DNA from: Octopus bimaculoides
Taxonomy: Eukaryota
Direction of reading: 5' to 3'
Length of the DNA: 64,000 nucleotides
Assembly (NCBI RefSeq): GCF_001194135.2
Contig: NC_068985.1
Coordinates: 16,476,275-16,540,274, forward strand
The notes beneath the pieces were generated by a model. That model searched no databases, was not told the DNA's origin, and saw only the letters and a list, made by a program, of their open reading frames with translations. Position numbers and translations under genes: made by a program. Shown here in pieces: positions 12,191-51,319 of this stretch. The stretch's first letter is position 1. Each line of letters begins with the position of its first letter.

Positions 12191-12784
12191 AAAGTGTGAT
12201 GTGAAGGAGGTTGGTTACTATTTGTAGCAAATCAAGCCACCACATAGATCACTAATGGTAGAGTGCACTGGAGAGGTGTGAATCCAAGTTCTGAGTTGTA
12301 ACCCAATAACTCCTCATTATAATACGATATTTAATAATTAGTCTGTTCACTGGTTAACCGGTTCAGTTCACAATCATGATTCCATTCTTGTGCATTCTGC
12401 TGTAGTCTCAGGTTGACAAATGGCTGAAATTTGGTTGATGGAAACTGTACAGAAGTTTTTTTTTTATGTGTGTGTGAATATATGTATGTATGTATGTACG
12501 CACACACACACACACACAAACACTAGTATACTCATGCTGTCACATTTTAAAAGCAATAAGTTGAAACTGGTATTTAATAAATACATCAGTGCATAACATA
12601 CAGTCCATGTATTTGTTATAAACTTGTTACATCAGATATTGCCAGATTAGGTTCTGATCAAATTTCATGTACCAAAACATGGTATATTTTATCAATAATC
12701 AATGTAACATGCATTCCACACACAGTACAATGGACTTCTGCATAGTTTCAGCCTGCCAAATTCACTGGTTGGTCTAGTGAATGG

Positions 12785-12823
<39 letters not shown>

Positions 12824-13303
12824 CAAGAACATAGAGGCTCAATCAACAACATAGAAATTAAAATCTTATCTACACATATCAGTGATGCAGCACTTAGACA
12901 AATTACTGAAGCTACACACATAATAGAAGAGAAACCTAGCCTGAATAGGAAACTAGAATGGAACACTAACACACACCACTAACAAACCACAACATGTGAC
13001 AACATGTTACCCATAAACCAATAATAATATGAACAAAGTATAATACAATACATAGATAAACAAATGGAATTAAATACTACATACGTTNNNNNNNNNNNNN
13101 NNNNNNNNNNNNNNNNNNNNNNNNNNNNNNNNNNNNNNNNNNNNNNNNNNNNNNATACAGACACTCCCCATACACACATGCACTTACAAAAGACACAGAC
13201 ACATTGAAAGACACGCATGCGTAGACACATACAATAGGAATACAAAATACAAAATGGCTGATATTTAGCAAGGTGAGACACACATAAGAAGGAAGGAAAC
13301 AAA

Positions 13304-13348
13304 GGACCACTGATGAGGTCACAGAAGTGTGACGAAAGAACTCTGGCC
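13304..13348 (+). ncRNA. Minimal type I hammerhead ribozyme fold (Penelope-type, palindromic short stem III)
   Basis: gg(a)cca-CTGATGA(13310-16)-G-GTCACA/gaag/TGTGAC-GAAA(13334-37)-GAAC-T-C(13343, predicted cleavage)-tggcc. All core nucleotides are present and stem II is a perfect 6 bp. Confidence 0.7.
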
Positions 13349-13467
13349 GAAATAAGATTAAGATTAATGTAATATAAAGCTGAAGCAAATTAACACCAAA
13401 TATACAGTGCGTGTGTTTTTATTGGCTAAACTGGCAATATGACCATCCCCAAGTACAACAATATATA

Positions 13468-14000
13468 TATTATCATTATCATACAACGTCCATTGTCCAT
13501 GCTGGCATGGGTTGGACGGTTTGATTGGGCTGGCACATTGAAAGGCTGCACCAGGCTCCAGTTTGATTTGGCATGGTTTTCTATGGCTGGATACCCTTCT
13601 TAATGCCAACTACTCTGAGAGTGTAATGGGTGCTTTAATGTGCCGCCAGCATGGGTGCCATTTGCGTAACACCAGTATCTATCATGACAGCAATTTTGCT
13701 TGGCTTGACGGGTGTTCTTCAGCAGAGCACATCACCAAAGGTCTCGGTCACTAGTCATTGTCTCTGTGAGGTTCAAAGTTCGAAGATCATGCTTCATCAC
13801 CTCGTCCCATGTCTTCCTGGGTCTACCTCCACCACAGGTTCTCTCCACAGTTAGAGATCAGCACTTTTTTTACACACCTGTCCTTGTCCATACACATCAC
13901 GACCATACCAGTGCAGCTGTCTCTCTTGCACACATCTGATTATTCTTATGCCTAACTTTTCTCTCAAGATGCTTATACTCTGTTGAACATGCACACAGAT
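13468..14000 (-). mobile_element. RTE-LINE 3' end (family C)
   Basis: Tail with tatcattatcat repeat. The upstream part decodes on the minus strand to the RTE C-terminus (GRPRKTW-like, from gtcccatgtcttcctgggtctacctc). Confidence 0.85.
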
Positions 14001-15127
14001 AAGGGAAATTAAGAACAGATGTTTATTCCATTAGTTGACAGCTGTTTTATAATCTATGTTAATTAAATAAGCAAAGCTACATAATCCATCACACATATAT
14101 AAATGAACATACATCAGAATTTACACCTATAAACATAATTTGTGCTATAAAGAAAGAGATTACTCTTCAGAACATTTGATGGCAAGTTTACACCAGACTC
14201 TAAATATCAGCAAAAAACAATACTATTAATACTATTCAAAATAAGCTCACTGAGTTAGAGACATTTCTTTGTTATTCTCACCATTGGAAGTGCCATGAAC
14301 CAGTGATTAATCCAATGAAAACATGTAATCAATGATGTTATAGTTCACAATGGAAATTAATAACATGTGCATCTATGAAAGAACTGTTCTAACTATACAC
14401 AACATAAAGCTTATATTGATTACATTTCTTATACTGATTTCGAACATGTGATCAATATTAGTTTCTTACTTAAGTACAAAGTCAGTTTTATATGAAAGAT
14501 TTATAGTCAATTGAATTAAATTCAATACTTTATATGTACTTATTTGATTCACTGTGGAGAGATGAAATTTTAATTCACTTCCAGCAGGATTTCAGATCAA
14601 AATCTTAAGCTCCAAAATTATGCCTTGTAATACCTGGAATTCAAAAATTCTATCTCAGCTAACACCACTATTCAAAATATAGTCAATATATTCTGTAAAT
14701 GAAGAGAAGCTTCATGATGATAATGTGTGGAAAGAATGGAATTAAAGACAGCAGTGTGTTTGGAAGATAAATGCAAAGAGGAACAATGCAACATATTTAA
14801 ACAGTGATTGGCAATAAAGGTTTACAATAAGGTTATTTTAAGAAAGTAACAATAAAAGGAGTTCATAATATAAATAAAATTAATTACTGATCAAGTAAAA
14901 ATTTTTAAAATAAGAAAAAAATTGCAGAAACATAAACAAGAAACAAAATTGAAATATTCTTGAAAAATTCCAGATTTTATTTTCAATATTATTTTTTTTT
15001 TTGTGTAGCAAAATTTGATCCTTAAAAGAGCAAATATACTTCAAGTTCATGTCAAACAATAAAATATATCCTTAAAATTTTTTACATATGTCTACAAGGG
15101 TAATCCTGGAATGGGTCCTACATTCAT

Positions 15128-16684
15128 TCAAAAGTGTCGTGTAACTGCATTCATCAAACAATATGTGTGATCAGACATCATGTTTGCATTCCAGTTGTGT
15201 GAGCAAATAAAATCATCTTCTTCTAGGCAGTATGTATGATCTGTACCTTTTCCATCAGGTTCTTTTTGGAGCTTAGCATCAAAACAATATGTATGATCAA
15301 AGGAAGGCTGATTCTCTTTTGCAGCTTGAAGTGAAAAGCTTAGTTTCTCCCAGTCTGTTTTAACTGACCTATTCCCAAATGTTTTCAAATTATTCATATT
15401 AGAAATTATGCCTTTTTTATGAGAATATGTGTGGTCGGGTTTAGAAATATTTGAACAATGTACTGTGGTTTCAACTGGTTGATCAAGGCAATTGTTTTTA
15501 CTTGACTTTTTCAGGGGTGTACTCACTGGTTGAGAGTTTTGGTTATGCTGAGTATTCAGAGGTATGGGTCTCCCAGAATTACTGCAATTATCTGTATGAG
15601 AAAAATGATGTACAAGCTGCAAAGATGAATCCTCTTGAGTGTTTGTCTTCTTTTCACTACAATGAACTCCAATACTGTATGTATGGTCAGGTTTCAATTT
15701 TCTTGCATTTTTCTCAGGCACAAGTTCGCTATTACAAGCTGAAGGTTCTAATTGTAACGTATCACCAAGCATGTTAGTGCTACGACCTGAGCTGTACGTG
15801 TGATCAGATTCGATATTGGGCTTGTTAGAATCAGATTGAATCACTGATGGTTTTTGACTGGAATGTGAAGATTTTACTTTCCTTTTACAAAGGCGAGATT
15901 TTTTAGCATGTGACCAATATGTGTGATCTGGTTGTAACTGATTTTTCTCAATGCTATTTGAATGACACTTACTTTTGTTGCCAAATGCAAGTGGGTTCGT
16001 TTCATTCCCATCATTCAACTCCTGGCTGGCATTGAAACAATATGTATGATCAGGTTTATACTGTTGATCAAAACTACAGTTACCTTTGGGCGATACTGAC
16101 TGTTCATCAACCTGTTTTGTACCTGAGCAGCTTCTTGCACCTTCACTCGAAGGAACAGCTTTCAATGAACAGCTTGATTTTTGTTGATCAGAATTTTGTT
16201 TTGTGTGCAATTCAATATGTTTGATAAGTTCATTTGATTTTGTAAATATTTTTTTACAATATCCACATTTAAAAGGATTTTTCGTCATGTGGCTTCCTGA
16301 ATGATTTCCTAAATGTGTACCTAAATTACTCGATGATGTAAAAGACTTTTCACAAAGGTTACATTGGAACAGTTTCTCATCAGAATGTACCCTCATGTGT
16401 CTGCTTAGGTTGCTATTATGTGCAAAAAGTTTTTGACAAAAAGTGCATTCATATAAGAAGTGTATCTTTAAATTCTTTGAAAGACCTTTGGAATAAAAAA
16501 ATGGCTTCAAAAAACATTTTTTACCAGAATTTTCTGTGTTATGGTTTTTAAAATATTTATTTAAATGGCTCTGAAAGGGGAAATTTTTTTTGTGGAAATC
16601 AAACATTGTAGGTCTTCCAATATTGCTTTTAGGTAAAGTTTTCTTAGAGTTCATTACACCAGTAGATTTTCCTTCACAATTCAT
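15128..16684 (-). CDS. C2H2 zinc-finger protein (3 intact + 2 degenerate N-terminal fingers) with eight DHTY motifs; 518 aa, single coding exon
   Basis: Uninterrupted 518-codon ORF. Fingers: YECTFC..HMRVH, FQCNLC..HLGNH, FKCGYC..HIELH, with linker HSDEKLF. DHTY at 16040-51, 15917-28, 15794-805, 15677-88, 15425-36, 15287-98, 15230-41 and 15161-72. Confidence 0.9.
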   Translation of the reverse strand: MNCEGKSTGVMNSKKTLPKSNIGRPTMFDFHKKNFPFQSHLNKYFKNHNTENSGKKCFLKPFFYSKGLSKNLKIHFLYECTFCQKLFAHNSNLSRHMRVHSDEKLFQCNLCEKSFTSSSNLGTHLGNHSGSHMTKNPFKCGYCKKIFTKSNELIKHIELHTKQNSDQQKSSCSLKAVPSSEGARSCSGTKQVDEQSVSPKGNCSFDQQYKPDHTYCFNASQELNDGNETNPLAFGNKSKCHSNSIEKNQLQPDHTYWSHAKKSRLCKRKVKSSHSSQKPSVIQSDSNKPNIESDHTYSSGRSTNMLGDTLQLEPSACNSELVPEKNARKLKPDHTYSIGVHCSEKKTNTQEDSSLQLVHHFSHTDNCSNSGRPIPLNTQHNQNSQPVSTPLKKSSKNNCLDQPVETTVHCSNISKPDHTYSHKKGIISNMNNLKTFGNRSVKTDWEKLSFSLQAAKENQPSFDHTYCFDAKLQKEPDGKGTDHTYCLEEDDFICSHNWNANMMSDHTYCLMNAVTRHF

Positions 16685-18729
16685 TATGTGGGCTAAAGCT
16701 CATTTAAAACATTTGATATTCGATGAGACTTTGTTACTTTCATTTTTTAAGCATAAGGTTAATTAGAAAAATATTTCTTTCTTTATTATTCTTCAGTTAG
16801 AGACACATTCTTGAAAATTCTCAATTAAATGGCTTGAAGCTGAAATAAATACAGGAAAAAAAATGGAAATTGAAATATATTGGAACATTTTTACACACAC
16901 ACACACACTACCACCACCACCACCAACAACAACAACATCAATAACAGCAGCTGTCTGAAACCCATTTCTATGCAAAAGTAAAAGCTTGCTTTGCAGGCCC
17001 CATGGTAGCCTAATTATTTTCAGCATAGTTCTCTTTTAATGGCCTCTTAGAACACACAAACATACAGTGTACCTATTCCAAAAGTGGAATACAAATTGTA
17101 AATATGTGTATTTATATGTATATTCATTCATATTGAGTCTGGTTTTGTTGTTGCTGATGATGATGGCAGGGGTGATGCAATTAAAATTGAAAGGGAGTTG
17201 AAATGTGAAAATTTCTTCTGTGGCACACAGGTTTACAGGACTTGGATTCATCATTAATTAAACAGTGTTGCTTGCTGCTAAATATACCTGCTTAAAAGGA
17301 CTGGGTCATAGTGATATATGTCTTAGCTATGGATATAATACTGTTCCATTGACAGTTATAAGATTCAGCAGCATTTTAGCCAACAAACCAACACCAATCA
17401 GACTTCACAATTCAAAAATGTCAAACAATTTGGTGTCTGTGTTTAAGATTTTCTATTTAATTTGTAAAGATAAAATGTCAACATAAGAGTTCAAATCCCA
17501 TCCAGATTGACTTTGCTTTCCTCCCACTGAGGGTAATAAAATAAATATCAGATAAAGTATTGGGGACAATATAATCACTTAAACTCCAAGGTAGCAAACC
17601 AATGACTAAAGCCAATAAAAGAATGAAAGACATGTCATAAAACTTCAAATGAGTGATATTTACCAACTCAGCCATACAAGATATCCATTTATTCATTCGC
17701 TCACCCATCACTCTATCCACTCACAATAAATAGTCATCCATTGCTGTTTTAATAAATTTGAAATTAATTTTACATAAACTTAAGTGAAATAATTTGAAAT
17801 ATAAATAAGTTTATTTCAAATAAAATTAAATAAAATAAATTAAATAAGAGATAAAAATAAAAATTAAACTTAATATTATTTAGCATGTGATGTTAGAGGG
17901 GTGGTCAGAACTTCTCACTTGTAAAGCTTTCATATAATCTATATTAATAAAAGTGAAATTCTACCTGTCCATCTTTGAGCCTTGTATCGCAGTCTACATT
18001 TGCCCTACAGAGACATATTATACCTTTTGGAATCAGGATAATCCCGCGATTGAAAATCTGCCCTTCATTTGGTTCTTGAGCATCCAGTATTGGAATCTGA
18101 TTTAAAAGCATTTCGGTTGCTATTTCTAGCAGATAAAGCTTGGCTGATTCATACCATCTTGCTTGGTGTTTGTCAGATGACATCAGAGATCAAGGGGGAG
18201 ATAAGTGACATTCGCTTTGTTACTTATACGTTGAGATAAGAACTTTGGGACAAATTGGCAAACAGTTGGAATTCAACTTGGGACTGTAAAGATTTCATTA
18301 CAGAATTAATTCTCATCTGTCCTTAATTTCTGATGAAACACCACCAGGGCATATAGTCATGCTATTTAGCTCTCTTTAATTTTGGGCTGCAGGCCCAAAC
18401 AGCCCTCCACAGGAGCTAGCTTAAAAGTCTGCATGGAGGGCAGCTTTTAAGGTAGTATAAAACAAAACAAAAATGAAAAAAAAATAATAACCCTTGTACC
18501 ACAGGAGCCAGCCTAATGCTGAAAGAAATTATATTTATCTCTCATATTTCATTTAATCTATTTTATAAGAGAAAAAAATGGAAACAGAGATGTGTATTTT
18601 AAAATACATCATCTCTTTGAGTTCCTAAATGATAGCAATTAGATGTAGGGACACTGATCTAAGTGGGGTGGTTTAGCAAAATCAGGGTACAGTAACACAA
18701 AATTTCACGTGGGATTTAGTTATGTAGTT

Positions 18730-19640
18730 TTACAAATGCATTCAGGTTCCACCAGAGTAAACTATACTTTTCAGATGAAAATATGAAGCAGGGTGTGTCT
18801 CAGGGAGATTCACTCTCTCTGTTTCATGACTCCATTACTTTCTCTGACAAGCATGCTGAGAACATCCAGATCTACTTATAAGCTTGTTCAAACCTGGGTA
18901 AAAATAAATCATCTGTGCTATAGAAATGACCTCTAACTATGCACCAAAAGTGAAAAAAACTTGGATTCTCTTGTTCAATAAGTAATCCCATTTAGCAAGG
19001 ATACTAGTATGCAGCATAAGGTGAATAACTGTGCAGATTTAGTTATGAAGAAGTCGGACGATGAAATCTGATAGCATAAAGATACCATCTTGTGGTATCT
19101 TTATATCACAGAGAGAATGAAGAATACAATCACCTAGGCATGTTGTAGGAAGATAAAGTAATGGAAAGAGAAGTGTGAGAAAGTCTCAAAAGAATACAAG
19201 AGAAAAAGTAAGAAGGTGCTTGAAACAAAACTAAGTGGAAATAGGGAGTTGATACACGAGTCATGTCAGTGTTGAGGTACTCGTTCTTTAAAGTGAACAA
19301 AAAAGAATTGCATCAAAGAACTGAACTCATCAAAGTTGATAACAGTGATAAGAGTTGAGGATGGCCATATCTTCAATGTAAGAACAGATAGATAGCTGTT
19401 TCTGGAAAGCAGCAATCTTAGAAGAATTAGGGATAACAGAGTGGAACCAGAGCAACAAGAAGTCTTAATCATTGATGTCCTGCTGAAAGTTTTGGTTGTT
19501 TGGTTCCTGTAAGGATAGATTTCACCATTTGGAAAGATATAACCAACAAAGCAGAGATGGCTAAGGAAAGAAGAGATTTGTGTCTTGTAAAGAAATGGGA
19601 TACAAAGAATGCAAATTAAAGCTGCTATGTATGCTCAGGG
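18730..19640 (+). mobile_element. Second, more decayed R4/Dong-like LINE remnant
   Basis: GVSQGDSLS..KINHLCY..DL..KSEKNLDSLVQ..KVNNCA..; later SVLRYS..KKEL. Colinear with the 5664-7160 element. Confidence 0.7.
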
Positions 19641-19912
19641 CTGAAATGGTAGCGACAGATATTAACGTAGAAAATTTAGCATTGTTCTTGTAATTTGGTA
19701 TTTTCATATTTAGAGTTTAGTTATATGGAAGAAAAGGGGGAAAAAAACTAAGTCTTTAGAGCTAATGTTAACCCCTGTGCCAAATCTTCAGGAGGAAACA
19801 GTTGTCTCATAAATCTTTGGTCATAAGAAATTAGTCCCAGCCTTGAATTAGGACAGAAAACCTCATGAGATTATATAGAAACAAAAAGATCAGCTTATCA
19901 ATGTGTTATTAA

Positions 19913-20127
19913 CCCTTTCATTACCAACCCAGCTGAAACTGGCTCTGTAGTACAAGTGTCTTGTTTTCATCAGTTTTGAATTAAAATCTTCCACCAAACC
20001 TGAGTCATAATTTATGTTCCTAACACTAGCTGAATGATAACTAAGTTATTTTACTAAATTCTTTGTTATATTTAAAGTAATTGAAAGAAACACAGAACAT
20101 CTCAAAATAAATACAGTAACGAAAGGG
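19913..20127. mobile_element. piggyBac-like MITE
   Basis: TTAA at 19909-12 and 20128-31 flanks TIRs ccctttcattac / gtaacgaaaggg. Confidence 0.85.
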
Positions 20128-20689
20128 TTAAAAGGTACAAGCACCCATCTGTTTCTACAAAAGAATTAACAGAAGATTCATGTCTTTTGGAAAATGATGT
20201 ACATTTAGTTATTTACACTTATAACATCAACTGTATTAAGTCAGCTGACTTTTGATTAAAAGTGTTCCAGCATGATCATCCCATCTTCACCCACCAGATG
20301 CAGTATCTAAGATTACATTGTCCAATACATTTTTTCCTATTTTAAGACAGTAAGATGTCTACTTTAGAAAGCCAAATGACTATATGGAGCAGAAGTTCTA
20401 AACATGTACAGTACCACTCTCAAGGGGACAGTGAGCATGTTGAAGTGGGTGTTAGGCTTTAGGGGACAATGCGATAACATGATTAAGATACTAAATTTTA
20501 CCTTTTAGTATCAAAAAGATCAGCTTGTTAATGTGTTATTAACTCTTTCATAAACATAAACAGCCAGAAGAAATACAGCAAGGCATTTTGTCTAAAGCTC
20601 TAATAATTCTGCCAACCCATGGCTGTCATATGAAATAATAAATCTTTCTATTATAGGCACAAAGTTTACAATAGTAATAATAATTCTTT

Positions 20690-21185
20690 CTACTTTAGGC
20701 ACAAAGCTTGACATTTTGAGGGAGGGGGTATCTAATCGATTATATCGACCCCAGTGCATAACTGGTACCTATTTCATTAACTCCGTAAGGATGAAAAGCA
20801 AAGTTGACCTTGGCAGAATTTGAACTCAAAATGTAAAGATGGACAAACTGCTGCTAAGCATTTTGCCTGGCATGCTAACAATTCTACCAGCTTGCCCCAA
20901 ATCCTTTCTACTATAGGCATATGGCCGTAATTTTTTTTTTTTTTTTGTGGGGGGGGGAACTAATCGATTACATCAACCCCAGTGTTTCACTAGTACTTCA
21001 TTTATCGGCCCCACAAGGATGAAAGGCAAAGTCGATCTTGGCGGAATTTGAACTCAGGTTTCAAATTTTGACACAAACCCAGCAATTTCAGGGGTGGGGG
21101 TTTGTCGATTACATTGACCTCAGTGTTCAACTGTTATTTATTTTATTGACCCCAAAATGCAAAGTCGACCTCTGCAGCATTTGTA
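20690..21185 (-). mobile_element. Cluster of about three SINE family B copies/fragments
   Basis: Repeated atcgattatatcgacccc..actggtac..aaggatgaaaggcaaagtcgac..gaatttgaactc (reverse complement of 7217-7682). Confidence 0.8.
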
Positions 21186-21289
21186 CTTAGAACATAATAA
21201 TAATAATAAAATCCTTTAGGCGTGGAGTACAAAGCTATTTGATAGAGAGATAATTGGTTCAATTCATGCAAGCACTTTTTTCATCAGCA

Positions 21290-22531
21290 AACAAGCAAAT
21301 CGAACCTCGATATATACAGGGTCAAATAAGAGGAAAGAGTAGAGCTCGTGACCTTTGTGAACCCCTCAATGACTGATGACATTGATACGATTAAGGTTCA
21401 GTTAGAATATCTCTGCAAGTTAACGTCTGCTGGAGAAACGTTCTGGGTGTGCGGTGAAGGCCTAGGTATAATGGTAAGTGTTGGACCTGACGAACAATAC
21501 ATAGGAGATAGGTGACGCGAAATAAAATAAGGTATATTGGGTGAACTTAGATGGAGGGGTATGCAACGAACTAGTTCAGAGGAACAATACTTATAAGGTA
21601 CCGAAATAGACAATATAGAGAACTCAGCCTCTCTCTAATGTACGTTCCGAATAAATATTTGGGAAATCAAACCCTTTTTTTTTTTTTTCTTTTTTACATA
21701 TTTAGAAGGTTGTCTTCGTGAGTTACACAAAACGAAAAAACATACTTAATTCTTACGAAGATTTAGAAATAAAATGTCCCAAACCCCACTTATATCAGAT
21801 GAACTAAGTTATCGGTAAATAAAATAACACATTTTGAATGACACCAAACCGAAAGAACACAAAATATAATTTGACAAATATAAGGTAACCAAATATAGAT
21901 ATACTATATATAAAGAGATATAACACAAGATATTAGATAAATATTTGAAGTGAATATCGTTGTTAGTTCCTTTAAAAACTCGATTGTTACAAGTTATTTT
22001 TGCTTAACAACTTACAAAGTGATTCGCTTGAAAATGACGTGTTGGAGGGGAGGGGAAACATTGTCGAAAAATGCGAAGCCACACATAGTGGCGGCCACGT
22101 GTAAGTCCGGTTTAACTAGATGATGGTCACTATTAGGACATATATCACACAGAAAGACAGGGTTTAAAGAAATCTGCCCTGCTGTGGAAGCCTGTTGAAA
22201 ATTCAAGGACTTTGTACTGACTAAACAGGGTAATGTGTGGTTTTACATACCTGAACTTCGTTGAGAAAAGTAACTCATAAATTAATTAAATTAATTTTGA
22301 AATATTACAAAATTAATTAATTAAGATTTTATATTTTAGTTTCAAACTTTTTTTTAAAGAAATTAAACATTGAAATAAATCTCTAGAATTTTTTTCAATT
22401 TCTTTGCGACAACAACAAACAGAACCCCGTAAACCCAGTGGCTAAAATGAATATAAAAATGCTAACTCATCTTAGATTTCGTTAATAGAATTATATAAAT
22501 TTAGCCAGTCAAATTTATGTGATAACCTAAT

Positions 22532-22566
<35 letters not shown>

Positions 22567-23060
22567 AACAGAACAGGATTTAGTTAACTAACATCTGGAT
22601 TGTGGAAACAATAACCAATTAAGATCCATTGAGCCATTTTAGCTAATTATTAAATAAAAACTGTTTTGTAGAGCATCAGTATAAAGAAAATAACATCCCA
22701 AATTAGGAATACGATTGTTTGAGGGGTTGTGGCTTCAGAAAGATAAAGGTAGACATACAACAACCGACTATAGGTACATAGATATACGACAAAAACAGAA
22801 CACCTTACCTTTCCGTTCATAAACATAGTGTTTGGTTGAAGGGTCAAATCTACTTCTGTCTGTGTTATGCAAGATGAAACGCAAAGGGTTGAGGGGGAAA
22901 CTCTTTCATGATTACCTCCCTTGAACAGCTGAATTGGCGTTTCCGGGTCCAGGAAATGTACTTTCGTTAATACGTCGAAGGTGTGATATGGTACGTTCTT
23001 ATCATACGACAGGAGAAATACAAATGGTCATTATGAAAGTCTTCAATGAATGTGATAGTC
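21290..23060. promoter_or_regulatory. Putative promoter/5'-exon region, possibly bidirectional, upstream of the DHTY zinc-finger gene
   Basis: Non-repetitive and visibly CpG-richer than flanks. Strong minus-strand donors CAG|GTATGT (22251/22250) and AAG|GTAAGG (22810/22809); plus-strand donor ATG|GTAAGT (21473/21474). Confidence 0.3.
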
Positions 23061-23509: not shown

Positions 23510-23860
23510 TTATACAATACTGGCACTTGTGCCGGTGGCATGTGAACAAAACATTGGACTGACTCCTGTGCAAGTGGCACGTAGAAAACACCATTCGAGC
23601 GTGACCGTTGCCAGTACNNNNNNNNNNAAGTGGCACGTAGAAAACACCATTCGAGCGTGACCGTTGCCAGTACAGCCGGACTGGCCCTCGTGCTAGTGGC
23701 ACGTAAAAAGCACCCACTACACTCTCGGAGTGGTTCAGCTGTAGGAATTCTGCCAGATCAGATTGGAGTCTGGTGTAGCCATCTGGTTCGCCAGTCCCCA
23801 GTCAAATCGTTCAACCCATGCTAGCATAGAAAGCGGACGTAAAATGATGATGATGATGAT
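23510..23860 (+). mobile_element. RTE-tail repeat (family C)
   Basis: Ends ccatgctagcatagaaagcggacgtaaaatgatgatgatg and contains internal gtggcacgtaaaaa tandem subunits. Spans a 10-N gap. Confidence 0.8.
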
Positions 23861-26364
23861 GAATTATAAATAGTTTACATAGGGAACCAGTGAAGGAGCT
23901 TCTGTTTGATCATTCAACCCACTTGAAATAGTCCCTAAATCTCACTGCCAACCCCAAAATCACATCCTTCCTTCTTACAAGAAGAATGTATTGGATAATC
24001 TGATGTTAGGTACACTATGTTTGAATAAAAGAGGGGTTGGTCAATGCTAGAATGCTTCATGTCATAGTTATGTTCAGTCAGAGTTTACTGGGAATAAACT
24101 GCAACCTTGCAGCTACCATTCAAATTATATTATGCTTTGCATTCACCAAACTAATTATTCACCTTTTCAGCTCTTTAATCTCTTTCTCTTTTTTTCTCCT
24201 TTAACGTCATGTGGAGCATATGGTACCAACAAGAAATTTCCACCTGTCTCTTTCTTTGACAAGGGACTGCATTTGTCTCAAGGTGTAACCACCTGCCAAT
24301 GCTTCAGTTTCTGTAGTTGTTTTTTATTGTCAGGCTTGTGTCTCACTGAGGTGTCAATTAGAGGACTTGCTTCGAATGTTGGAAACAGGTTTCCATGGGG
24401 TGTGCCATTTTCTCCTCTTGAGACAAATTATATGCCTATCAAATCATACTTAACTTAATCTTCTCCAACTATGATCAATATTATGATTTCACTGTTCTAC
24501 AGCCACATAGCATCACATTTTTATATGAAACATCCTCTTTTACATTTACAGAAAATGCTACTGTTAATGGCAAACTTTTTCCAGAGAGTATGCTTTCAGT
24601 TGCCACCTCGAAGTTTCCTCAAATATCTCGGTTAAAAAGTTTATTTCATAATTTATTAATTACGAAATCAATAAACAGACTTATATACTGGTTGTTTCAG
24701 TTGATGTTTGTTAAATGTCTGCCTCAAACACATTTCAAAGTAAGATAAATTCTCATAATTGAAGAAATGGTGATGCTTTGTGCTAGCAGCAGTTAGTTCA
24801 TAAGCTAAGTTATGAGCGACTTCTGTAAGCTCAGTCCCCAGAGGAGCATAGAATTTAGCATTTTGAGGTTTGTTCTTTGTCAAACACTATTTTCCTTCAC
24901 TCTTAACTGAAGGGCAACACCCTAAATGTTAGATTCTACACTGCTCACAGTAACTGGTAACAGGAAACTTAGTCAAAATTCAACCTGTTAATCTTTCAAT
25001 TTGCTGCTAATGGAACTTGGTTTATACTTGTGTATAAACTAAGTTCTATTAGCAACAAATTGAGCGTAAGTTACTGAATAGTTTGTCAATTAATATTGGT
25101 TAAACTAATGCTATTATCAAGCCTTTACTCATGATAATTTTAACTTTATCATTCTACAATCTTCTTATTACCATCTTTACTGTGCTGATCATGATCAGGA
25201 GAACCACAAGCCTCAAGTTTTCAGATTTGATTCTAGAACAGGCAGCAGCTTACATTGATCTCTTCCAGCTATTTTTAAACAGAAATTATAATTTTTGTTA
25301 TTTTGTATCAGAAATGTTGTCGCAATCAACTTTGTTGTTTAATTCCAAGTCAACCTTGATCAGGAAGACCTGAAAGTAACTTTTTACTGTTGTCTTCTTC
25401 ATTGCTGTTCATCTTACACACATTCTCTCCGGGTTTGGTGTAGCCCACCTAACATAATTGGCATTTAAATAAAATTTTAAATCAAAGATATTCCTTGTCA
25501 ACCTTTTCATTCTCTAAGCAGCATTTGAGAAAAATCTTAAATGCTTAACAAATTATAAGGTCTCTTAGTCATCATTGCTTTGTGCTCATTTTTACCATAA
25601 GGTTTTCCAGCACAGCATTTTACCAAACACCATAATCTTTCATCAGATATACACACAACAGCAGTGAGAAATGTCAATTTTTGCAGTGTGTGCCATGTTT
25701 TTTTTTATCAAGCTACCCACAGTTGAGAGTTGTCTGCAGTAGAACTAAACAGCCTCTTCTATCCTATATCAGTTTTATTCCGTTGCTGCTCTCCTAGACA
25801 GGATGCCTTTGCAGCACATTGTAGAGTTTTCTCCAGGCAATCAAAGTAAAATTATTTTCATTACCAGTGCCAACTAGTCAGCAAGAAGGCTCACAGCAGT
25901 TAAGTACGCTGGGAATGATTGTCTCCATAACTGATAGAGTAAGCTTAGTTCTAAGCTCACAGCATCACTCAGGCATAGAAGATTTCTTTGACATAAAGCA
26001 AAGGGAGCTTTCACTGTTCTGAAGCAGTTTCATCATTGAATGGATAGAAATTATTGCAATGGACTAATGGGAATAAGCTGTCAGGATAGATTGAGTCAGC
26101 TAGAGACATGTGCTTCCTGAAGCTATTATATATAATGTTAATAACTGGTTTTAATGAGACTAATTGATATATACTTGGGTTAAAACAAAACATTTTTACA
26201 AGGTTCGCTCTCTCTCATTGGCTAGTGATGGTCACTTGTTTTGGTGCTTTATCTTCACCGCCAAATTCCAGCCCAAAGAAACAAATTACATGAGAGTTCA
26301 AATGGGTCAGGCAAATGAAAATTGGTTCTTTGGTATGCCATCTGCACTTGTGTGGTAATCTCTT

Positions 26365-32985: not shown

Positions 32986-33865
32986 TTATTCAGCAGTAAT
33001 AATTTTATCATCTGTGGCCAAAACTACTTCTGTAGCAGTTACTGAACTTTCAGCTGGTTGAAAATTTACTCTTATATCTTCAGTAGGCAGAGTCTGTGAA
33101 TTACCATCACCATTTACAGAACACAGTTCCAATGGTTGCACCATCAATAGAGTATGTCCTGCATTTCTTTGATCGGAACTTTCATCAGAGGCAATCTGTG
33201 ATTGAGATGGTGGTAAATGCAAAGTAATTGTATGTGTTGATATTCCTTGTTTAGAAGATGTATTTATGGTTGCTTGCATCCCAGTAAGCATCTGAGAGTC
33301 TTGGGGAAGAGAATTGGTTGCAATAGCATAAATTAATTCTGCAGCAGTGAGATCTGTTGATACGAGATTATTCCCTGTTTGGGCCATTTTAATAATGTCA
33401 TCTGCACTAAGACTTGAAACACTATTCTCTACAGGTACTAACTGAGTTTGTATTTCGCCATTACTAGGGTCGTTGACTTTTTGTAATATACTTTTATTAT
33501 TACTGGAAGATAGAACTGTTGAATTAGTAGTTGTTTCAGTGGTGATGGTAGATGTTGTCGTTGATGTGGCGGTAGTTGTGGTGGTGGTGTTGTTGGTGCC
33601 TTCTTGGACATCAATCAACCCATACTTGTGATCACTGACATGATTAGTAAAACTGGTAGCATTCACAGTTCGGTAATTACAAATATCACAGTGATAAATT
33701 CCAGATGAATCTGGATGTTTATTTTTCATGTGAGTTTTTAAAGAAATAGCCTGGATGCACGAGTAAGAACAATATTGGCATTTGTATGGCCTCAATCCTG
33801 AGTGGCGCATTTTGTGACGGCGAAGTGAGTTGTGATCTCCAGTAGCATACTGACAAACATCGCAC
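32986..33865 (-). CDS. 11-finger C2H2 zinc-finger protein, coding exon 2 (fingers 9-11 plus T/S/Q-rich tail)
   Basis: Acceptor tttcttttt-atttAG at 33867-66. Phase-2 join AA|G gives EKPFK-CDVCQYATGDHNSLRRHKMRH, then YKCQYC..HMKNKH and YHCDIC..HVSDH. Stop at 32986-88. Confidence 0.92.
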
Positions 33866-34285
33866 CTAAATAAAAAGAAAATATTGAGTATCATTGTTTT
33901 ACAGTAAATGTAAAGGAAAATAAATCATTAAGGCTCACATAACTTTGAAATTATAAAAACAAAATTAAATAAACTATTCAATTTTTTTTACCAATGTCAA
34001 TATCTGCTTAAATTTACACTTTCTGTTCTTTATAACATTTGAGATTTGAACTCAGACTGATTTCCTCTCTTAAAAATATGGTACAGGTATAACCATGTTC
34101 ATTTTAATGAGTTTTATTTTTTTTTGCTGATAAAAAACATATTTATCTGTTAACTAGATATAAGAGGGTTTGGAAATAATATGAGGTTTCCGTAAGAACC
34201 AGTCCCCACTGAATACAGGCAGAGCAATACAAACGAATAACTATAAATGGCCTGAAAGTTTTTTGAGATTTAAAAGATTACTTAC

Positions 34286-35841
34286 TTGAATGGTTTTTCC
34301 CCAGTGTGGATACGTAGATGTAATTGTAGCATAGCTTTACGTGCTGTTGAATGACCACAGTATGAACATACATATGGTTTGATCTTACTGTGGACAGCTT
34401 GTACATGTTTACTTAAACACTTCTGATTAGCAAAAGTCCGTTTACAAATGTCACACTGTTTAGTAGTATACCAACGATCAGCATCATTTGATTGATGTTC
34501 TGCATGGATCATTTGGTGGTTCCTCATTTGACTGAATTGCTTAAAGCCTTTCCAGCATATATCACATGTATACGGCCTCTGGTCACTATGAATTTCTTTA
34601 TGAATCAGTAATTTGTGGGTAGTGTCTGTTTTGAACTCACAGTTCTCACATGCAAAAAGATCTGTATCAATGGAGTGACAGCGCCAAAGATGCATCCTAA
34701 GATGTTTCCAAAGAACAAATTCAACTGCACACATGTTACATTCAAAGAAAGACCTATTTGCATCTTTTTTGTGGCAAGCAATGTGAATCTTTAAACTTTG
34801 GTCTTTCTTAAACTTGGCAAAACAGCCTTGCAGATTACACTTAAGACTGTAGCCTTCTGTAAGAATATTAGTATCTTTGTTCTTTCTTTTCTTTTTACCT
34901 AAATAATAATCATCTTTCAGAGCTTTTGGTGGACGAATTTTTCTACGACTCCGTCCTTTGCGTGAATACCATTCACTATTTTCATCTTCCTCCCAGTCCT
35001 TGTCTGAAACAGGTGAAGAGGATCTCTGAGGTAATGGATTTTTCCGTTTTCTACCTGGCTTTTTTTTGGTAGACATAACTTGTGTTCCAACACTGACTCT
35101 ATTAACTGTTTCTCCAGTTAATTGATTGTCTTCATTTTGTGGCAAAATATTGTGGACTTGTACTATATGAGATTTACATTCTTCAATACTGTTAAACCCA
35201 ATTCTACATTGGCCACACAGAAACAATTCTTTCGTAAGAACATCATCCCCTTCAATATTAGGTTCAGAAAAGTCGTCAGAAGCAGCAACAGAAAACTGAC
35301 TAATTGCTTGTGAATTAATTTCAGATTCATTAACAAAAGTCAAAGAGTCTTCAACAGTTGTTGTAGCTTCCAGTGGAATGTAAGATGGTACAATATTTCC
35401 AGTTGATAAGATATCATTATGAGTTGGAATCATTTGTGGTTCATTTAAAGAACCTTGAGTGAAAATAACTTGTTGATGATTTGAGGCTAACTCTATCAAT
35501 GACCCAGCATCAGATTTTTCAATCAAAGAAACAGAGTCTACATCTGACAATGACGATGCTTCTTGAGAAACAGCTACAGACTGAGTCTTAGACAGATCAG
35601 GTATTGTCTCTTCCTCAACAGTGACATCACCTGAAGAACTTTCTGCTTGTTCAATATCATGCATATTTGAAATCGTACTTAATTTGGAAGGAGTTGTCTT
35701 GATGTGCACATTACGAACATGTATACCAATCTCTTGAGGCTGGTTGCAAGAGAAAGTACAGAAACGGCATTTGTATGTAGTAACAACATCCATATAATCA
35801 GTAAGATTAACATCAGTAAATCTGTCGACTGTTGAAGCCAT
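34286..35841 (-). CDS. 11-finger C2H2 zinc-finger protein, coding exon 1 (fingers 1-8); spliced product 811 aa
   Basis: ATG at 35841. Eight C2H2 fingers ending HLRIHTGEKPFK, plus a basic KKKPGRKRK patch. Donor AA|GTAAGT at 34286/34285; 420-bp intron. Upstream acceptor tccttcttgtttatctAG at 35894-93 implies a non-coding 5' exon. Confidence 0.92.
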
Positions 35842-44275: not shown

Positions 44276-44505
44276 CTTGGAGATTAATGTAATGTAAATT
44301 TTAAGAAACTGTGCTGTTTAATTCATCAAAATATTACGATTTAAACATATTTTAGTGAGAAAAAGCGCTAGAGGCTAAGCTTCAATGTAGCAGTAAATAC
44401 AACAGAGGGAAACAATAGGTTTATAATTGAAGTGACCAAGGGAAGTAACTTGTGTGTGTCAGAGAAGTAGCGTTTGTCGTAGCAGACGATTTATTTCTGA
44501 GAAAT
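44276..44505. promoter_or_regulatory. Putative bidirectional promoter between a minus-strand 5' exon (donor AAG|GTTAGT at 44276/44275) and the TOP6BL-like ATG
   Basis: Short unique segment with several CpGs and an ETS-like GGAAGT (44441-46). The donor is 230 bp from the divergent ATG. Inference only. Confidence 0.3.
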
Positions 44506-45879
44506 ATGACTGAGACATGGGCAGCAGTTGGAATTGGCCAAATGGAAGATTTACCTGTTCATGTAGCAGTAGAAGAATTAATACGTATGGTATTTCTAGA
44601 ACAAAAGCAACAATTTGTAAGAGATAAATCTTCAATTACCCTTGATATAAAATCATGCAAAACTGGAAATGATAGCACTCAACAAGAATTATTTAAAATT
44701 AAATTATATTGTATCAGCGGTGTTTCAGACATTTCTATGTATCTTAAGGACGGATTAATCAAAACATTGCAATTCTTAGTAGAAAGAATGCAATCCTTTA
44801 TTAAAAATGAAAGTCACTTATGTCAAATTGAAAAGTGTCATTTGAGTGACAACCATGCTTTGCAAAGGAATTATTTTTTTATTAAAAATCCTCAAAATAA
44901 AACCACTGACTTAAGTGAAATTACTCAAAGTATCAACAAAGTCCTTCAAAGTCAAGCTACATGGTATTTGAGAATCTACCAAAATCATGTACATATGCTG
45001 AGTGAATGTAGCAAAATTCTTGATTATCTGAAAAAATTAAGAATTCTAAACCCATCAGATGAATTCAAGTATAAATTAAAAGTATCAGGTATTAAATGCA
45101 ATCCTGATTTATCTGCTAATAACTATATTGAACTGTGTAATAAAAGAATACTCACTGGTTTCCATCAAAATACTAAAACTGGTAAGATAGATGATATTTC
45201 AGGAAAGACTTTCATAGGTACTACAACATCTTTAACTATTTCTACCAAGGAAAATATTTATCGGAATATCTTTACTTTGACTTGTCTTGGTTTTCTTTTC
45301 CCACTTGCAGAAGAAGATGCTGGAGAAAAACAGCATTTAATTGAATTTTTCTCCTTTGGTCCCTATGGCGAACCCTTAAAACTTCCACATACAATTTTAA
45401 ATTTTATTTCATGGGAGAAATACAATCTAAAAGCTTTGCTAAATAATCCCTTTGAAAATACAAGCAGTTCTTTACGGCCAGAAGTATGTCTTATTACACA
45501 ACTAACAAATGGAAATACTTTGAAATGTCAAAAGTTTTGTGTTGTTATTTATATAATATTTGACAATACTGATAAAAGAGATGCGATGAGCTTACATGTT
45601 CTTGGATATCTACATAACAACTTGAAGTCTATTTTTGACACCAATGAAAGAAATGTAAGAATAGCAATAGAAAGTTTCACAAATCTTGTCTTTCATACAA
45701 ATACTTCAAATCATGAAAATACAAATGAAGACAGTTTTTCAAGTGTTAGTGAATCGATTGCAAACATCGTTCGAAGATCTACAAATGATGAATTTCGAGA
45801 AAGCTGTTTTCATACCATGAAATCTAGTTCAGTGCAAGAAATGAAAACTACAATAACAAAAAGGTTGAAAAAGCTTTGA
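44506..45879 (+). CDS. TOP6BL: Type 2 DNA topoisomerase 6 subunit B-like (TOPOVIBL) meiotic SPO11 partner; 457 aa, intronless ORF
   Basis: Colinear matches to human TOP6BL/C11orf80 as recalled: YLKKLRILNP..FKYKLKVSG ~ FLRKIIMVHP..FHFSVKVNG; FFSFGPYGEPL ~ IFLYGPLGLPL; ISWEKYNL ~ VDWKKYHL; SVSESIANIVRRSTNDEFRESCFHTMKSSSVQEM ~ [34 protein letters not shown]. First ATG at 44506 (track ORF starts at TTG 44452). Confidence 0.8.
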   Translation: MTETWAAVGIGQMEDLPVHVAVEELIRMVFLEQKQQFVRDKSSITLDIKSCKTGNDSTQQELFKIKLYCISGVSDISMYLKDGLIKTLQFLVERMQSFIKNESHLCQIEKCHLSDNHALQRNYFFIKNPQNKTTDLSEITQSINKVLQSQATWYLRIYQNHVHMLSECSKILDYLKKLRILNPSDEFKYKLKVSGIKCNPDLSANNYIELCNKRILTGFHQNTKTGKIDDISGKTFIGTTTSLTISTKENIYRNIFTLTCLGFLFPLAEEDAGEKQHLIEFFSFGPYGEPLKLPHTILNFISWEKYNLKALLNNPFENTSSSLRPEVCLITQLTNGNTLKCQKFCVVIYIIFDNTDKRDAMSLHVLGYLHNNLKSIFDTNERNVRIAIESFTNLVFHTNTSNHENTNEDSFSSVSESIANIVRRSTNDEFRESCFHTMKSSSVQEMKTTITKRLKKL

Positions 45880-50902: not shown

Positions 50903-51319
50903 CTTGACATACCTGCAAAACAAAAGCAAAAAAAATAAATTTTTTTTTTGATATTGAACTGTATTTGTGACATGGAACACAATCACATCGCTTCACATCT
51001 ATTTTTCCACACTTGCATGAATCAGACAAAATTTTGCTGAGATAGGTTTTCTACACTTTGATACTCTTCCTTTCACCAATCCTCATCTGTTTGCAGGCAA
51101 GACAATATTTTTCATGACCAAACATGTTCTTAATGGAAGACCAGAAACAAATAACATCACTTATATAATGGTAATGTTTGTATACAATCATCACATGCTG
51201 TCAAGACAAGAGTACACAAACATGCTTTAATCAACCTGGGGTAATAGGACACTTGCCAAGAGCCATGTAAAGGCACTAAATCCAAGCTTAAATACTGGTT
51301 GGAAAGCAAGCTTCTGTAC

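What the first reader, a model, noticed from the sequence alone, without database searches (positions are those of the whole stretch)
15128..16684. Zinc-finger protein with eight tandem-dispersed HCF-1-binding-type DHTY motifs
Seen: after three C2H2 fingers, the low-complexity C-terminal two-thirds contains exactly DHTY eight times (mostly PDHTY or SDHTY, followed by C/S/W), while the spacers do not repeat. Established: (D/E)HxY is the HCF-1 Kelch-binding motif of VP16 (EHAY), LZIP/CREB3 (DHTY), THAP proteins and E2F1, usually in one or a few copies. Inference: selection keeps the tetrapeptide while spacers drift, so this may be a multivalent DNA-tethered HCF-1 (Set1/MLL/OGT) recruiting scaffold or titrator among the cephalopod C2H2 genes.
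Basis: partly seen in the sequence, partly recalled or inferred. Interest (0 to 1): 0.75.

Follow-up and report, generated by a model that had tools for sequence, protein, structure and literature searches.

The report
Zinc-finger protein with eight HCF-1-type motifs
An expressed cephalopod gene encodes a three-finger DNA-binding protein whose long disordered tail carries eight perfectly conserved copies of DHTY, the short peptide that other transcription factors use once to dock the co-regulator HCF-1, so it is probably a multi-site HCF-1 recruiter, though binding has not been tested.

Summary
The minus-strand ORF 16684..15128 encodes a 518-aa protein with three intact C2H2 fingers. Its C-terminal 353 residues are predicted to be disordered and contain DHTY exactly eight times; composition predicts 0.002 copies.

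The gene is real and expressed. It has a spliced 5'UTR exon and a single coding exon.

Five homologue clusters exist: one at 91% identity, Argonauta hians at 67%, and three unnamed at 35-40%. All keep all eight motifs at aligned positions. Spacer identity falls to 24-27% with indels. Motif codons show saturated synonymous change and no amino-acid change. There is no DNA-level tandem repeat. Selection therefore acts on the peptide.

An exhaustive profile search found the family nowhere else.

The motifs fit the HCF-1-binding motif [DE]HxY and most of the extended rules published in 2026: small x, uncharged Y+1, no Pro at Y+2, and location in a disordered region. Human CREB3's DHTYS is a validated binder. 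A cockroach THAP-zinc-finger protein has three tandem DH[AT]Y[CS]L motifs.

No cephalopod HCF-1 was seen directly.

Verdict: a lineage-restricted, unusually multivalent variant of a known kind, a transcription factor carrying HCF-1-binding motifs. Confidence in HCF-1 binding is about 0.6.

The parts
22809..22880 (-). Exon 1 (5'UTR only; at least these 72 nt), ending in a canonical GT donor (AAAG|GTAAGG)
   Evidence: An RNA contig of run X9 (1969 nt) joins 22809 to 16839. Loose read ends at 16841 match 22811 onward. The donor sequence was read.
16840..22808 (-). Intron within the 5'UTR (GT...AG), about 6 kb, holding high-copy repeats
   Evidence: The acceptor is TTTATTTCAG|CTTCAAG.
14970..16839 (-). 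Exon 2: 155 nt of 5'UTR, the whole CDS and about 160 nt of 3'UTR. AATAAA lies at 14976-14981.
   Evidence: RNA contigs of X9 and X5 cover 14970/15098-16839 with 0 mismatches. Read depth stops at 16842. The poly(A) signal was located.
15128..16684 (-). Complete CDS, 518 aa plus stop. An in-frame stop lies 5 codons upstream of the ATG.
16541..16606 (-). Degenerate N-terminal finger (aa 27-48, MFDFHKKNFPFQSHLNKYFKNH). Both cysteines are lost. The distant homologues have an intact finger here (FKCDYCKKIFSSSASLAKHHKMH).
   Evidence: Alignment A1. Pfam finds 4 fingers in P0004/P0006 against 3 in the window protein.
16385..16453 (-). C2H2 finger 1 (aa 78-100). Recognition positions -1,2,3,6 = H,S,N,R, identical in the distant homologues.
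   Evidence: Pfam, alignment, AF2 pLDDT 59-68.
16301..16369 (-). C2H2 finger 2 (aa 106-128). Recognition positions are S,S,N,T (S,S,N,Q in the distant homologues).
16205..16273 (-). C2H2 finger 3 (aa 138-160). Recognition positions K,N,E,K are essentially conserved.
   Evidence: pLDDT 80-81.
15131..16189 (-). Predicted intrinsically disordered tail (aa 166-518), 21% Ser+Thr, carrying all eight motifs
   Evidence: AF2 on a 6-sequence alignment gives every residue 166-518 a pLDDT below 50 and essentially no secondary structure. Composition.
16040..16051 (-). Motif 1, DHTY aa 212-215 (context QQYKP-DHTY-CF)
15917..15928 (-). Motif 2, DHTY aa 253-256 (NQLQP-DHTY-WS). P-DHTY-W-S is invariant in all six sequences.
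15869..15904 (-). Conserved basic cluster aa 261-272 (KKSRLCKRKVKS), a likely nuclear localisation signal
   Evidence: K261, K262 and K271 are invariant. The NLS reading is an inference from the resemblance to the KRKV type.
15794..15805 (-). Motif 3, DHTY aa 294-297 (PNIES-DHTY-SS)
15677..15688 (-). Motif 4, DHTY aa 333-336 (RKLKP-DHTY-SI)
15425..15436 (-). Motif 5, DHTY aa 417-420 (NISKP-DHTY-SH)
15287..15298 (-). Motif 6, DHTY aa 463-466 (NQPSF-DHTY-CF)
15230..15241 (-). Motif 7, DHTY aa 482-485 (DGKGT-DHTY-CL)
15161..15172 (-). Motif 8, DHTY aa 505-508 (ANMMS-DHTY-CL), followed by the conserved C-terminal tail ..V.R.F-COOH
22910..22968 (-). 59-nt element just upstream of exon 1, 80% identical to a site 3.4 kb upstream of the Argonauta orthologue's CDS. 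Candidate promoter or first-exon sequence.
   Evidence: blastn of L002 against the window.

Best explanation
This is a lineage-restricted, so far cephalopod-only, sequence-specific zinc-finger transcription factor. Its disordered C-terminal tail is an array of eight short linear motifs (nine in the distant homologues) of the HCF-1-binding type.

Proposed mechanism:
- The three conserved C2H2 fingers bind a conserved DNA site of about 9-10 bp. This is inferred.
- A basic cluster takes the protein to the nucleus. This is inferred.
- Each [KQ]P-DHTY-[CS] motif can dock into the HBM pocket on top of the Kelch beta-propeller of host cell factor (HCF). This is inferred from motif match.
- One DNA-bound molecule therefore either captures HCF with high avidity or holds several HCF molecules at once.
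- HCF in turn brings its known partners: SET1/MLL, NSL, Sin3-HDAC, OGT and TFIID. This is established for mammalian HCF-1.
- The Ser/Thr-rich tail would itself be a likely OGT substrate.

Shown here: the motif array, its purifying selection at the amino-acid level, the predicted disorder, the expression and the gene model.

Not shown here: DNA binding, HCF binding, stoichiometry, and whether the outcome is activation, repression or titration.
For: (1) There are eight exact DHTY copies in a 353-aa tail against 0.002 expected.

(2) All eight are invariant at aligned positions in six sequences. Spacer identity falls to 24-27% with many indels. The 32 motif codons carry 12-18 synonymous and 0 nonsynonymous differences in distant pairs. 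Spacer dN reaches 0.9-1.0.

(3) There is no DNA-level repeat beyond the motif codons.

(4) The tail is predicted to be disordered (pLDDT below 50 for residues 166-518), while the fingers fold. Known HBMs lie in disordered regions (10.64898/2026.03.19.712392).

(5) The core matches D/E-H-x-Y (PMC13631171).

(6) The conserved non-anchor residues match the extended determinants from deep mutational scanning:
- x is small (T, 49 of 50 copies).
- Y+1 is never charged (C or S, and W once).
- Y+2 is never Pro.
- H-4 is hydrophobic in 5 of 8 motifs (p about 0.01) (against sections read).

(7) Human CREB3's CLVHHDHTYSLPRE is a scored binder of the HCF1 Kelch domain (Table S1).

(8) A cockroach protein (P0029) has a THAP domain (E=5.9e-19) followed by three tandem DH[AT]Y[CS]L motifs and then C2H2 fingers. 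That is the classic THAP-plus-HBM context with the same motif flavour.

(9) The HCF Kelch domain is 62-77% identical from Trichoplax to human, including a lophotrochozoan (leech, 74%). Pocket residues S202 and P134 are invariant in 17 animal sequences.

(10) The finger region is under strong constraint (dN/dS 0.04-0.08), with nearly identical recognition residues.

(11) The gene is transcribed and spliced, and was held by all 18 indexed runs listed.
Against: No binding data or complex model exists.

In human, only 66 of 347 disordered D/EHxY peptides bound the Kelch domain, so a core match alone is weak evidence.

Trp at Y+1 (motif 2, invariant) is reported as disfavoured in some peptide backgrounds. 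Cys at Y+1 was not looked up in the DMS data, and no human DHTYC peptide occurs in the supplementary tables.

The invariance of D (never E) and of T (never S, A or N) is stricter than human HBM rules require. That could point to a different or additional reader.

No named cephalopod HCF was among the 120 hits listed, so its presence is inferred from conservation across animals.

No known HCF partner has more than a few HBMs, so eight or nine copies has no precedent to lean on.
Confidence: 0.6

Rival explanations
1. The DHTY[C/S/W] array is a multivalent docking platform for a different, unidentified reader, for example another beta-propeller or a cephalopod-specific factor. On this reading the resemblance to the HCF-1-binding motif is coincidental or only partial.
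For: The constraint is stricter than the HBM consensus. D is never E, and T is never another small residue, in 49 of 50 copies. W at Y+1 of motif 2 is invariant. Only about 19% of human disordered D/EHxY peptides bind HCF1. The family is restricted to one lineage.
Against: No other reader of D-H-x-Y is known to me. The conserved flanks agree with the HCF1 determinants. The identical DHTYS of CREB3 binds HCF1. The same flavour sits next to a THAP domain in P0029.
Confidence: 0.2
2. The motifs are binding-competent HBMs, but the protein acts mainly as a soluble sponge that titrates HCF away from other transcription factors. It would not be a DNA-tethered recruiter.
For: High valency suits sequestration. 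Octopods have lost one of four fingers. RNA level is modest.
Against: The three remaining fingers are under the strongest purifying selection in the protein (dN/dS 0.04-0.08), and their recognition residues are conserved across the deepest split. A pure sponge would not need this. The low expression seen here argues against stoichiometric titration of an abundant factor.
Confidence: 0.12
3. The repeated D-H-x-Y-C units are chemical rather than docking elements. They could be metal-coordinating or redox-sensitive His/Cys/Asp/Tyr sites, or repeated Tyr/Thr modification sites. Alternatively they could be relics of decayed zinc fingers (H-T-GEKP-Y-x-C linkers).
For: All four core residues and the frequent Cys at Y+1 are potential metal ligands or modification sites. 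Eight of the nine Tyr residues in the tail are in motifs.
Against: Cys is replaced by Ser in 3 of 8 octopod motifs and by Trp in one. Spacing is 19-84 aa, not the 28-aa finger period. AF2 predicts no fold. The motif lacks the x between Y and C that a finger linker has.
Confidence: 0.05
4. The pattern is a chance or compositional artefact, or a recent DNA tandem duplication in a non-functional ORF.
For: None found.
Against: None of 100,000 shuffles reproduced it and 0.002 copies are expected. There are no tandem repeats. The mRNA is spliced and expressed. Orthologues keep an intact ORF, and their motif codons differ synonymously.
Confidence: 0.01

Closest known systems
CREB3 / Luman / LZIP (and CREBZF, CREB3L1): bZIP factors with one HCF-1-binding motif
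   Same: The core and Y+1 are identical (DHTY-S in CREB3, aa 78-81). The motif lies in a disordered region of a DNA-binding transcription factor. The CREB3 peptide is a measured HCF1 Kelch binder.
   Different: CREB3 has one motif against eight or nine here. It has a bZIP rather than a C2H2 DNA-binding domain. There is no sequence homology outside the motif.
THAP-family zinc-finger proteins with an HBM (THAP1/3/7/11). The nearest case is the Periplaneta americana 'ZNF480-like X2' (P0029): THAP + 3x DH[AT]Y[CS]L + 8 C2H2 fingers.
   Same: The arrangement is a zinc-coordinating DNA-binding domain plus a D-H-x-Y motif in a disordered linker. P0029 shows that the motif can be multiplied and combined with C2H2 fingers, with the same DHTY-C/S flavour (PMC13631171).
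   Different: The window protein has no THAP domain and no coiled coil. P0029's three copies sit in an obviously repeated ~24-aa unit, whereas here the spacers are unrelated. Eight or nine copies against one to three.
Multivalent short-linear-motif scaffolds in general: RIP140/NRIP1 with about 9 LxxLL motifs, ZEB1/2 with several PxDLS CtBP motifs, GW182 GW repeats, Eps15 DPF repeats (from my own knowledge, not tested here)
   Same: Many copies of one short docking peptide sit in a disordered region with unconserved spacers, giving avidity or multi-partner recruitment. ZEB and RIP140 are also transcription regulators.
   Different: The motifs and readers differ. None of these is known to use the HCF-1 Kelch pocket.
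Generic poly-C2H2 zinc-finger proteins (annotated 'ZNF429-like' in Argonauta hians)
   Same: There are three canonical C2H2 fingers. The best non-family hits are vertebrate and insect poly-ZNFs at 40-44% identity over the fingers only.
   Different: There is no KRAB, SCAN, BTB or ZAD domain and only 3-4 fingers. The tail has no relative outside the family. The ZNF429-like name reflects finger similarity only.

Membership tests
HCF-1-binding motif (HBM; ELM LIG_HCF-1_HBM_1) | Core sequence [DE]-H-x-Y | tested here: met
   Eight exact DHTY copies. The distant homologues have nine.
HCF-1-binding motif (HBM; ELM LIG_HCF-1_HBM_1) | Lies in an accessible, intrinsically disordered region | tested here: met
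   AF2 pLDDT is below 50 with no secondary structure for residues 166-518.
HCF-1-binding motif (HBM; ELM LIG_HCF-1_HBM_1) | Extended determinants: small residue at x, uncharged Y+1, no Pro at Y+2 (bioRxiv 10.64898/2026.03.19.712392) | tested here: met
   x = T in 8 of 8. Y+1 = C,W,S,S,S,C,C,C. Y+2 = F,S,S,I,H,F,L,L. Caveat: W at Y+1 of motif 2 is disfavoured in some human peptide backgrounds.
HCF-1-binding motif (HBM; ELM LIG_HCF-1_HBM_1) | Preference for a hydrophobic residue at H-4 | tested here: inconclusive
   In the window protein, 5 of 8 are hydrophobic (Y,L,I,L,M) against a 20% background (p about 0.01). In the distant homologues only 3-4 of 9 are (p 0.1-0.24).
HCF-1-binding motif (HBM; ELM LIG_HCF-1_HBM_1) | Motif conserved among orthologues against diverging flanks | tested here: met
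   Motif identity is 32 of 32 residues in all pairs against 24-27% in the spacers. There are 0 nonsynonymous changes and synonymous sites are saturated.
HCF-1-binding motif (HBM; ELM LIG_HCF-1_HBM_1) | Nuclear or transcriptional protein context | tested here: met
   Three C2H2 fingers and a conserved KRKVK-type basic cluster. Localisation itself is inferred.
HCF-1-binding motif (HBM; ELM LIG_HCF-1_HBM_1) | The partner (HCF with an intact Kelch HBM pocket) is present in the same organism | tested here: inconclusive
   The Kelch domain is 62-77% identical across animals, including a leech. S202 and P134 are invariant in 17 sequences. No cephalopod HCF was identified among the 120 hits shown.
HCF-1-binding motif (HBM; ELM LIG_HCF-1_HBM_1) | Physical, Tyr-dependent binding to the HCF Kelch domain | not testable with these tools
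The PDB copy holds no solved Kelch structure. A wet-lab assay is needed.
C2H2 zinc-finger transcription factors | Tandem C-x2-C-x12-H-x3-H fingers recognised by Pfam PF00096 | tested here: met
   zf-C2H2 E=1.2e-14 with three stretches. The fingers fold in AF2 with pLDDT 59-81.
THAP-domain proteins (the usual zinc-finger carriers of HBMs) | N-terminal THAP domain (PF05485) | tested here: not met
   There is no THAP hit at E up to 1. The upstream exon is non-coding and an in-frame stop precedes the ATG. Caveat: a whole-protein Pfam scan also failed to list the real THAP domain of P0029, and the N-terminus of the window protein was not scanned on its own.

The most novel reading that the evidence does not exclude
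A coleoid-cephalopod invention: a DNA-bound hub whose eight or nine high-affinity-type HBMs hold several HCF molecules at once, together with their SET1/MLL, NSL, OGT and TFIID partners, at specific loci. It would be a natural multivalent HCF nucleator, possibly condensate-forming. It would show that HBM valency, and not only affinity, is an evolvable parameter of HCF-dependent transcription.
Probability: 0.3. Interest if true: 0.75.

Novelty: new variant of a known kind. Interest (0 to 1): 0.6.

Why it matters
HCF-1 is recruited to promoters by transcription factors that carry one D/E-H-x-Y motif. Recent work shows that motif affinity tunes transcriptional output and O-GlcNAcylation.

This protein carries eight or nine perfectly conserved, optimally flanked copies on one DNA-binding molecule. 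That makes it a natural experiment in valency. It would allow a direct test of several questions:
- Do several HCF molecules load onto one factor?
- Does avidity substitute for affinity?
- What does such a hub do to chromatin?

The protein is also a clean, lineage-restricted regulatory gene in cephalopods, whose zinc-finger repertoire is greatly expanded but functionally almost unexplored.

If the motifs turn out not to bind HCF, an equally conserved array would point to an unknown reader of DHTY.

Tried and rejected
(1) AF2 docking. I built a leech HCF Kelch + (GGGGS)6 + tail fusion with a paired alignment. A first alignment (A3) was discarded because MAFFT laid four tail-only rows over the Kelch domain.

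(2) Finding a cephalopod HCF. It returned 487 hits but listed only the best 120, none named as a mollusc.

(3) Naming the organisms of the 35-40% homologues. A full-text search for their SRR accessions found nothing. 'Decapodiform' therefore remains a guess.

(4) Looking for relatives outside the family. Two searches with a tail-only profile, one through the word index and one exhaustive, found only family members.

(5) RNA editing of the motif codons. No differences at 5% or more were seen in three deep RNA runs, but depth was only about 5-15x.

(6) Literature. No paper in the library links DHTY arrays, cephalopods and HCF.

(7) DMS values for Cys, Ser and Trp at Y+1 in the KANSL3 background could not be retrieved. 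I guessed the peptide strings wrongly and the file is cut.

(8) Rejected readings: decayed finger linkers (the spacing and pattern do not fit), a DNA-level repeat, and chance.
Full report
**1. What is there**

The finding's coordinates are exactly one minus-strand ORF, 16684 down to 15128, encoding 518 aa. The translation contains three canonical C2H2 fingers at aa 78-100, 106-128 and 138-160 (Pfam zf-C2H2 E=1.2e-14). It contains DHTY eight times, at aa 212, 253, 294, 333, 417, 463, 482 and 505, and no other [DE]HxY.

In 100,000 shuffles of the tail, none had even two copies. Composition predicts 0.002 copies. No other DHTY occurs in any of the six frames of the 64-kb window. Eight of the nine tyrosines in the tail belong to the motifs.

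Tandem Repeats Finder finds nothing in the tail. The only direct-repeat family covering all eight sites is the 19 nt over the motif codons themselves, at 72-95% identity.

**2. It is a real, expressed gene**

All 18 indexed runs listed for 'organism A' hold 96-100% of the ORF's sampled words; most are labelled RNA. An RNA contig of 1969 nt joins 22809-22880 to 14970-16839.

The junction has a canonical donor (AAAG|GTAAGG) and acceptor (TTTCAG|CTTC). Soft-clipped read ends at 16841 match 22811 onward.

The upstream exon is non-coding. Within exon 2 a stop codon lies five codons upstream of the ATG, so the 518-aa CDS is complete and sits in one exon. AATAAA at 14976-14981 fits the contig end at 14970.

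Read depth is modest, about 5-15x from 6% of each run. No RNA editing at 5% or more was seen.

**3. Relatives and selection**

A search of 5.8 billion proteins gave only five full-length relatives:
- P0001, 91% identity, transcript contigs.
- P0002, 67%, 'zinc finger protein 429-like', Argonauta hians.
- P0004, P0005 and P0006, 35-40% identity, 565-631 aa, unnamed.

Two searches with a tail-only profile, one through the word index and one exhaustive against 1.84 billion representatives, found nothing else.

In the six-way alignment every one of the eight motifs is invariant at an aligned position. Spacer identity to the distant group is only 24-27% with many indels, and the fingers are 69-70% identical. 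The distant group has a ninth motif, between octopod motifs 4 and 5; it is DHIY in one sequence. That group also has a fourth, N-terminal finger that has lost both cysteines in the octopod sequences.

Codon analysis gave these results:
- In the 32 motif codons there are no nonsynonymous differences in any pair. Synonymous differences are 4 in the closest pair and 12-18 in the others, at 16 synonymous sites, which is saturation.
- Spacer dN is 0.27 against Argonauta and 0.9-1.0 against the distant group.
- Finger dN/dS is 0.04-0.08.

Selection therefore acts on the amino-acid motif, not on DNA.

The Argonauta locus also shares a 59-nt element with window 22910-22968, just upstream of exon 1, which supports orthology.

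**4. Anatomy of the motif**

Pooled over copies and species, the motif is [KQ]-P-D-H-T-Y-[C/S/W]-[S/L/F/H]. P-DHTY-W-S of motif 2 is invariant in all six sequences.

AF2 on the six-sequence alignment folds the fingers (pLDDT 59-81). It gives every residue from 166 to 518 a pLDDT below 50, with essentially no secondary structure. The motifs are therefore conservation islands in a disordered region, which is the signature of short linear motifs.

Other conserved islands are a basic cluster, KKSRLCKRKVKS at aa 261-272, which is a likely NLS, and the C-terminal ..V.R.F.

**5. What the motif most likely does**

D/E-H-x-Y is the HCF-1-binding motif (HBM). It docks on top of the HCF-1 Kelch propeller (review PMC13631171; bioRxiv 10.64898/2025.12.28.696747). 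[quoted passage not shown]

A 2026 preprint (10.64898/2026.03.19.712392) reports the following:
- Only 66 of 347 human disordered D/EHxY peptides bind.
- Binding also needs a small residue at x and an uncharged Y+1. W, L and Q at Y+1 are disfavoured in some backgrounds.
- Pro is not tolerated at Y+2.
- A hydrophobic residue at H-4 is preferred.

The octopus motifs compare as follows:
- x is T in 8 of 8 motifs.
- Y+1 is C,W,S,S,S,C,C,C.
- Y+2 is F,S,S,I,H,F,L,L.
- H-4 is Y,L,I,L,S,P,K,M, so 5 of 8 are hydrophobic (p about 0.01). This signal is weaker in the distant homologues.

That fit explains why T and the Y+1 residue are conserved as well as the anchor residues. In the preprint's Table S1, CREB3's CLVHHDHTYSLPRE, with the same DHTY-S, is a scored binder.

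One of the weak finger hits gave independent support. The Periplaneta protein P0029 has a THAP domain (E=5.9e-19 when its N-terminus is scanned alone). Three tandem DDHAYCLP / DDHTYCLP / TDHTYSLA motifs follow, and then eight C2H2 fingers. The same motif flavour, multiplied, thus sits in the classic THAP-HBM position.

The HCF Kelch domain is 62-77% identical between human and Trichoplax, Nematostella, a leech, a tick and Drosophila.

**6. What could not be shown**

- No cephalopod HCF was identified among the 120 hits listed.
- The PDB copy holds no HCF Kelch structure, only the Fn3 fragment 4GO6.

HCF binding therefore rests on motif match, context and conservation.

Three points go beyond human HBM rules: the invariance of D (never E), the invariance of T, and the invariant Trp of motif 2. 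They leave room for a different or additional reader.

**7. Mechanism proposed**

The fingers bind a conserved DNA site. Their recognition residues are H,S,N,R / S,S,N,T(Q) / K,N(S),E,K and are nearly identical across the deepest split.

The disordered tail presents eight HBMs. One bound molecule therefore captures HCF with high avidity or holds several HCF molecules at once. HCF brings its partners: SET1/MLL, NSL, Sin3, OGT and TFIID.

The tail is 21% Ser+Thr and would be a likely OGT substrate, since HCF1 promotes O-GlcNAcylation of its binders.

I put 0.6 on HCF binding by at least some motifs. The rivals are:
- an unknown reader (0.2);
- an HCF sponge rather than a recruiter (0.12), which is a sub-case of HCF binding; the strongly constrained fingers argue against it;
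- a metal, redox or modification role, or finger relics (0.05);
- an artefact (0.01).

**8. Comparison and novelty**

The protein works like an HBM-bearing transcription factor such as CREB3/Luman, THAP11 or the cockroach THAP-ZNF. It is a member of the C2H2 class and not of the THAP family, since no THAP domain was found.

I know of no HCF partner with more than a few HBMs. The literature searches found no description of such an array, or of this family.

General analogues are multivalent motif scaffolds such as RIP140 (LxxLL), ZEB (PxDLS) and GW182. These come from my own knowledge.

I rate it a new variant of a known kind: lineage-restricted, with unprecedented motif valency. Interest is 0.6.

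Noticed in passing
window 16583 (codons 32-34, A8 run on the coding strand): In RNA run X20, 8 of 10 reads (3 start positions) carry one extra base in the homopolymer, which would frameshift the CDS after aa 33. It is absent from X22 reads and from the X9 and X5 contigs. It could be a null allele in one animal, PCR duplicates or slippage.
   Followed up: partly
window 32986-35841, minus strand: Two long ORFs (519 aa and 302 aa) look like exons of another C2H2 zinc-finger gene, with ZNF462- and ZNF142-type finger hits. It is unrelated to the DHTY family. Its single DHKY lies inside a finger (H-x4-H).
   Followed up: partly
window 44452-45879 (+) and 50363-50986 (-): A 475-aa ORF hits DUF4554 (E=4e-8). 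A 207-aa ORF has a C-terminal Ribosomal_L36 domain (E=8e-11), probably mitochondrial bL36.
   Followed up: partly
window 12400-13600, 16812-17212, 19620-21220, 22430-22830, 23630-24000: These blocks have very high RNA and contig depth, hundreds of chimeric joints and many loose ends. This is high-copy interspersed repeat sequence around and inside the gene's intron. A (CA)n/(CCA)n/(CAA)n microsatellite lies at about 16885-16940.
   Followed up: no
L003 34-2263 against window 17261-15002: The transcript contig of the 91% orthologue is collinear with the window about 420 nt past the exon-2 acceptor (16839). In that species the contig is either unspliced or starts at an alternative upstream site.
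   Followed up: no
window 16541-16606 (aa 27-48): The octopod sequences carry a decayed finger, with both Cys lost, where the distant homologues have an intact fourth finger. This is a lineage-specific loss of one DNA-binding module.
   Followed up: partly
P0029 (Periplaneta americana ZNF480-like isoform X2): The whole-protein Pfam scan listed only C2H2 families. The isolated N-terminal 100 aa scores 69 bits for THAP. The THAP domain was missed in the full-length scan, which is a caution for other 'no THAP' calls.
   Followed up: yes
window 15917-15928 and flanks (motif 2): P-DHTY-W-S is invariant in all six sequences. Trp at Y+1 is reported as disfavoured for HCF1 binding in some human peptide backgrounds, so this copy may have a distinct affinity or a distinct partner.
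   Followed up: no
alignment A1 columns ~497-510 (between window aa 385 and 392): The distant homologues carry a ninth motif (PDHTYSV, or PDHIYCI in P0006) that is absent from all three octopod sequences. It is the only copy that varies in presence or sequence.
   Followed up: partly
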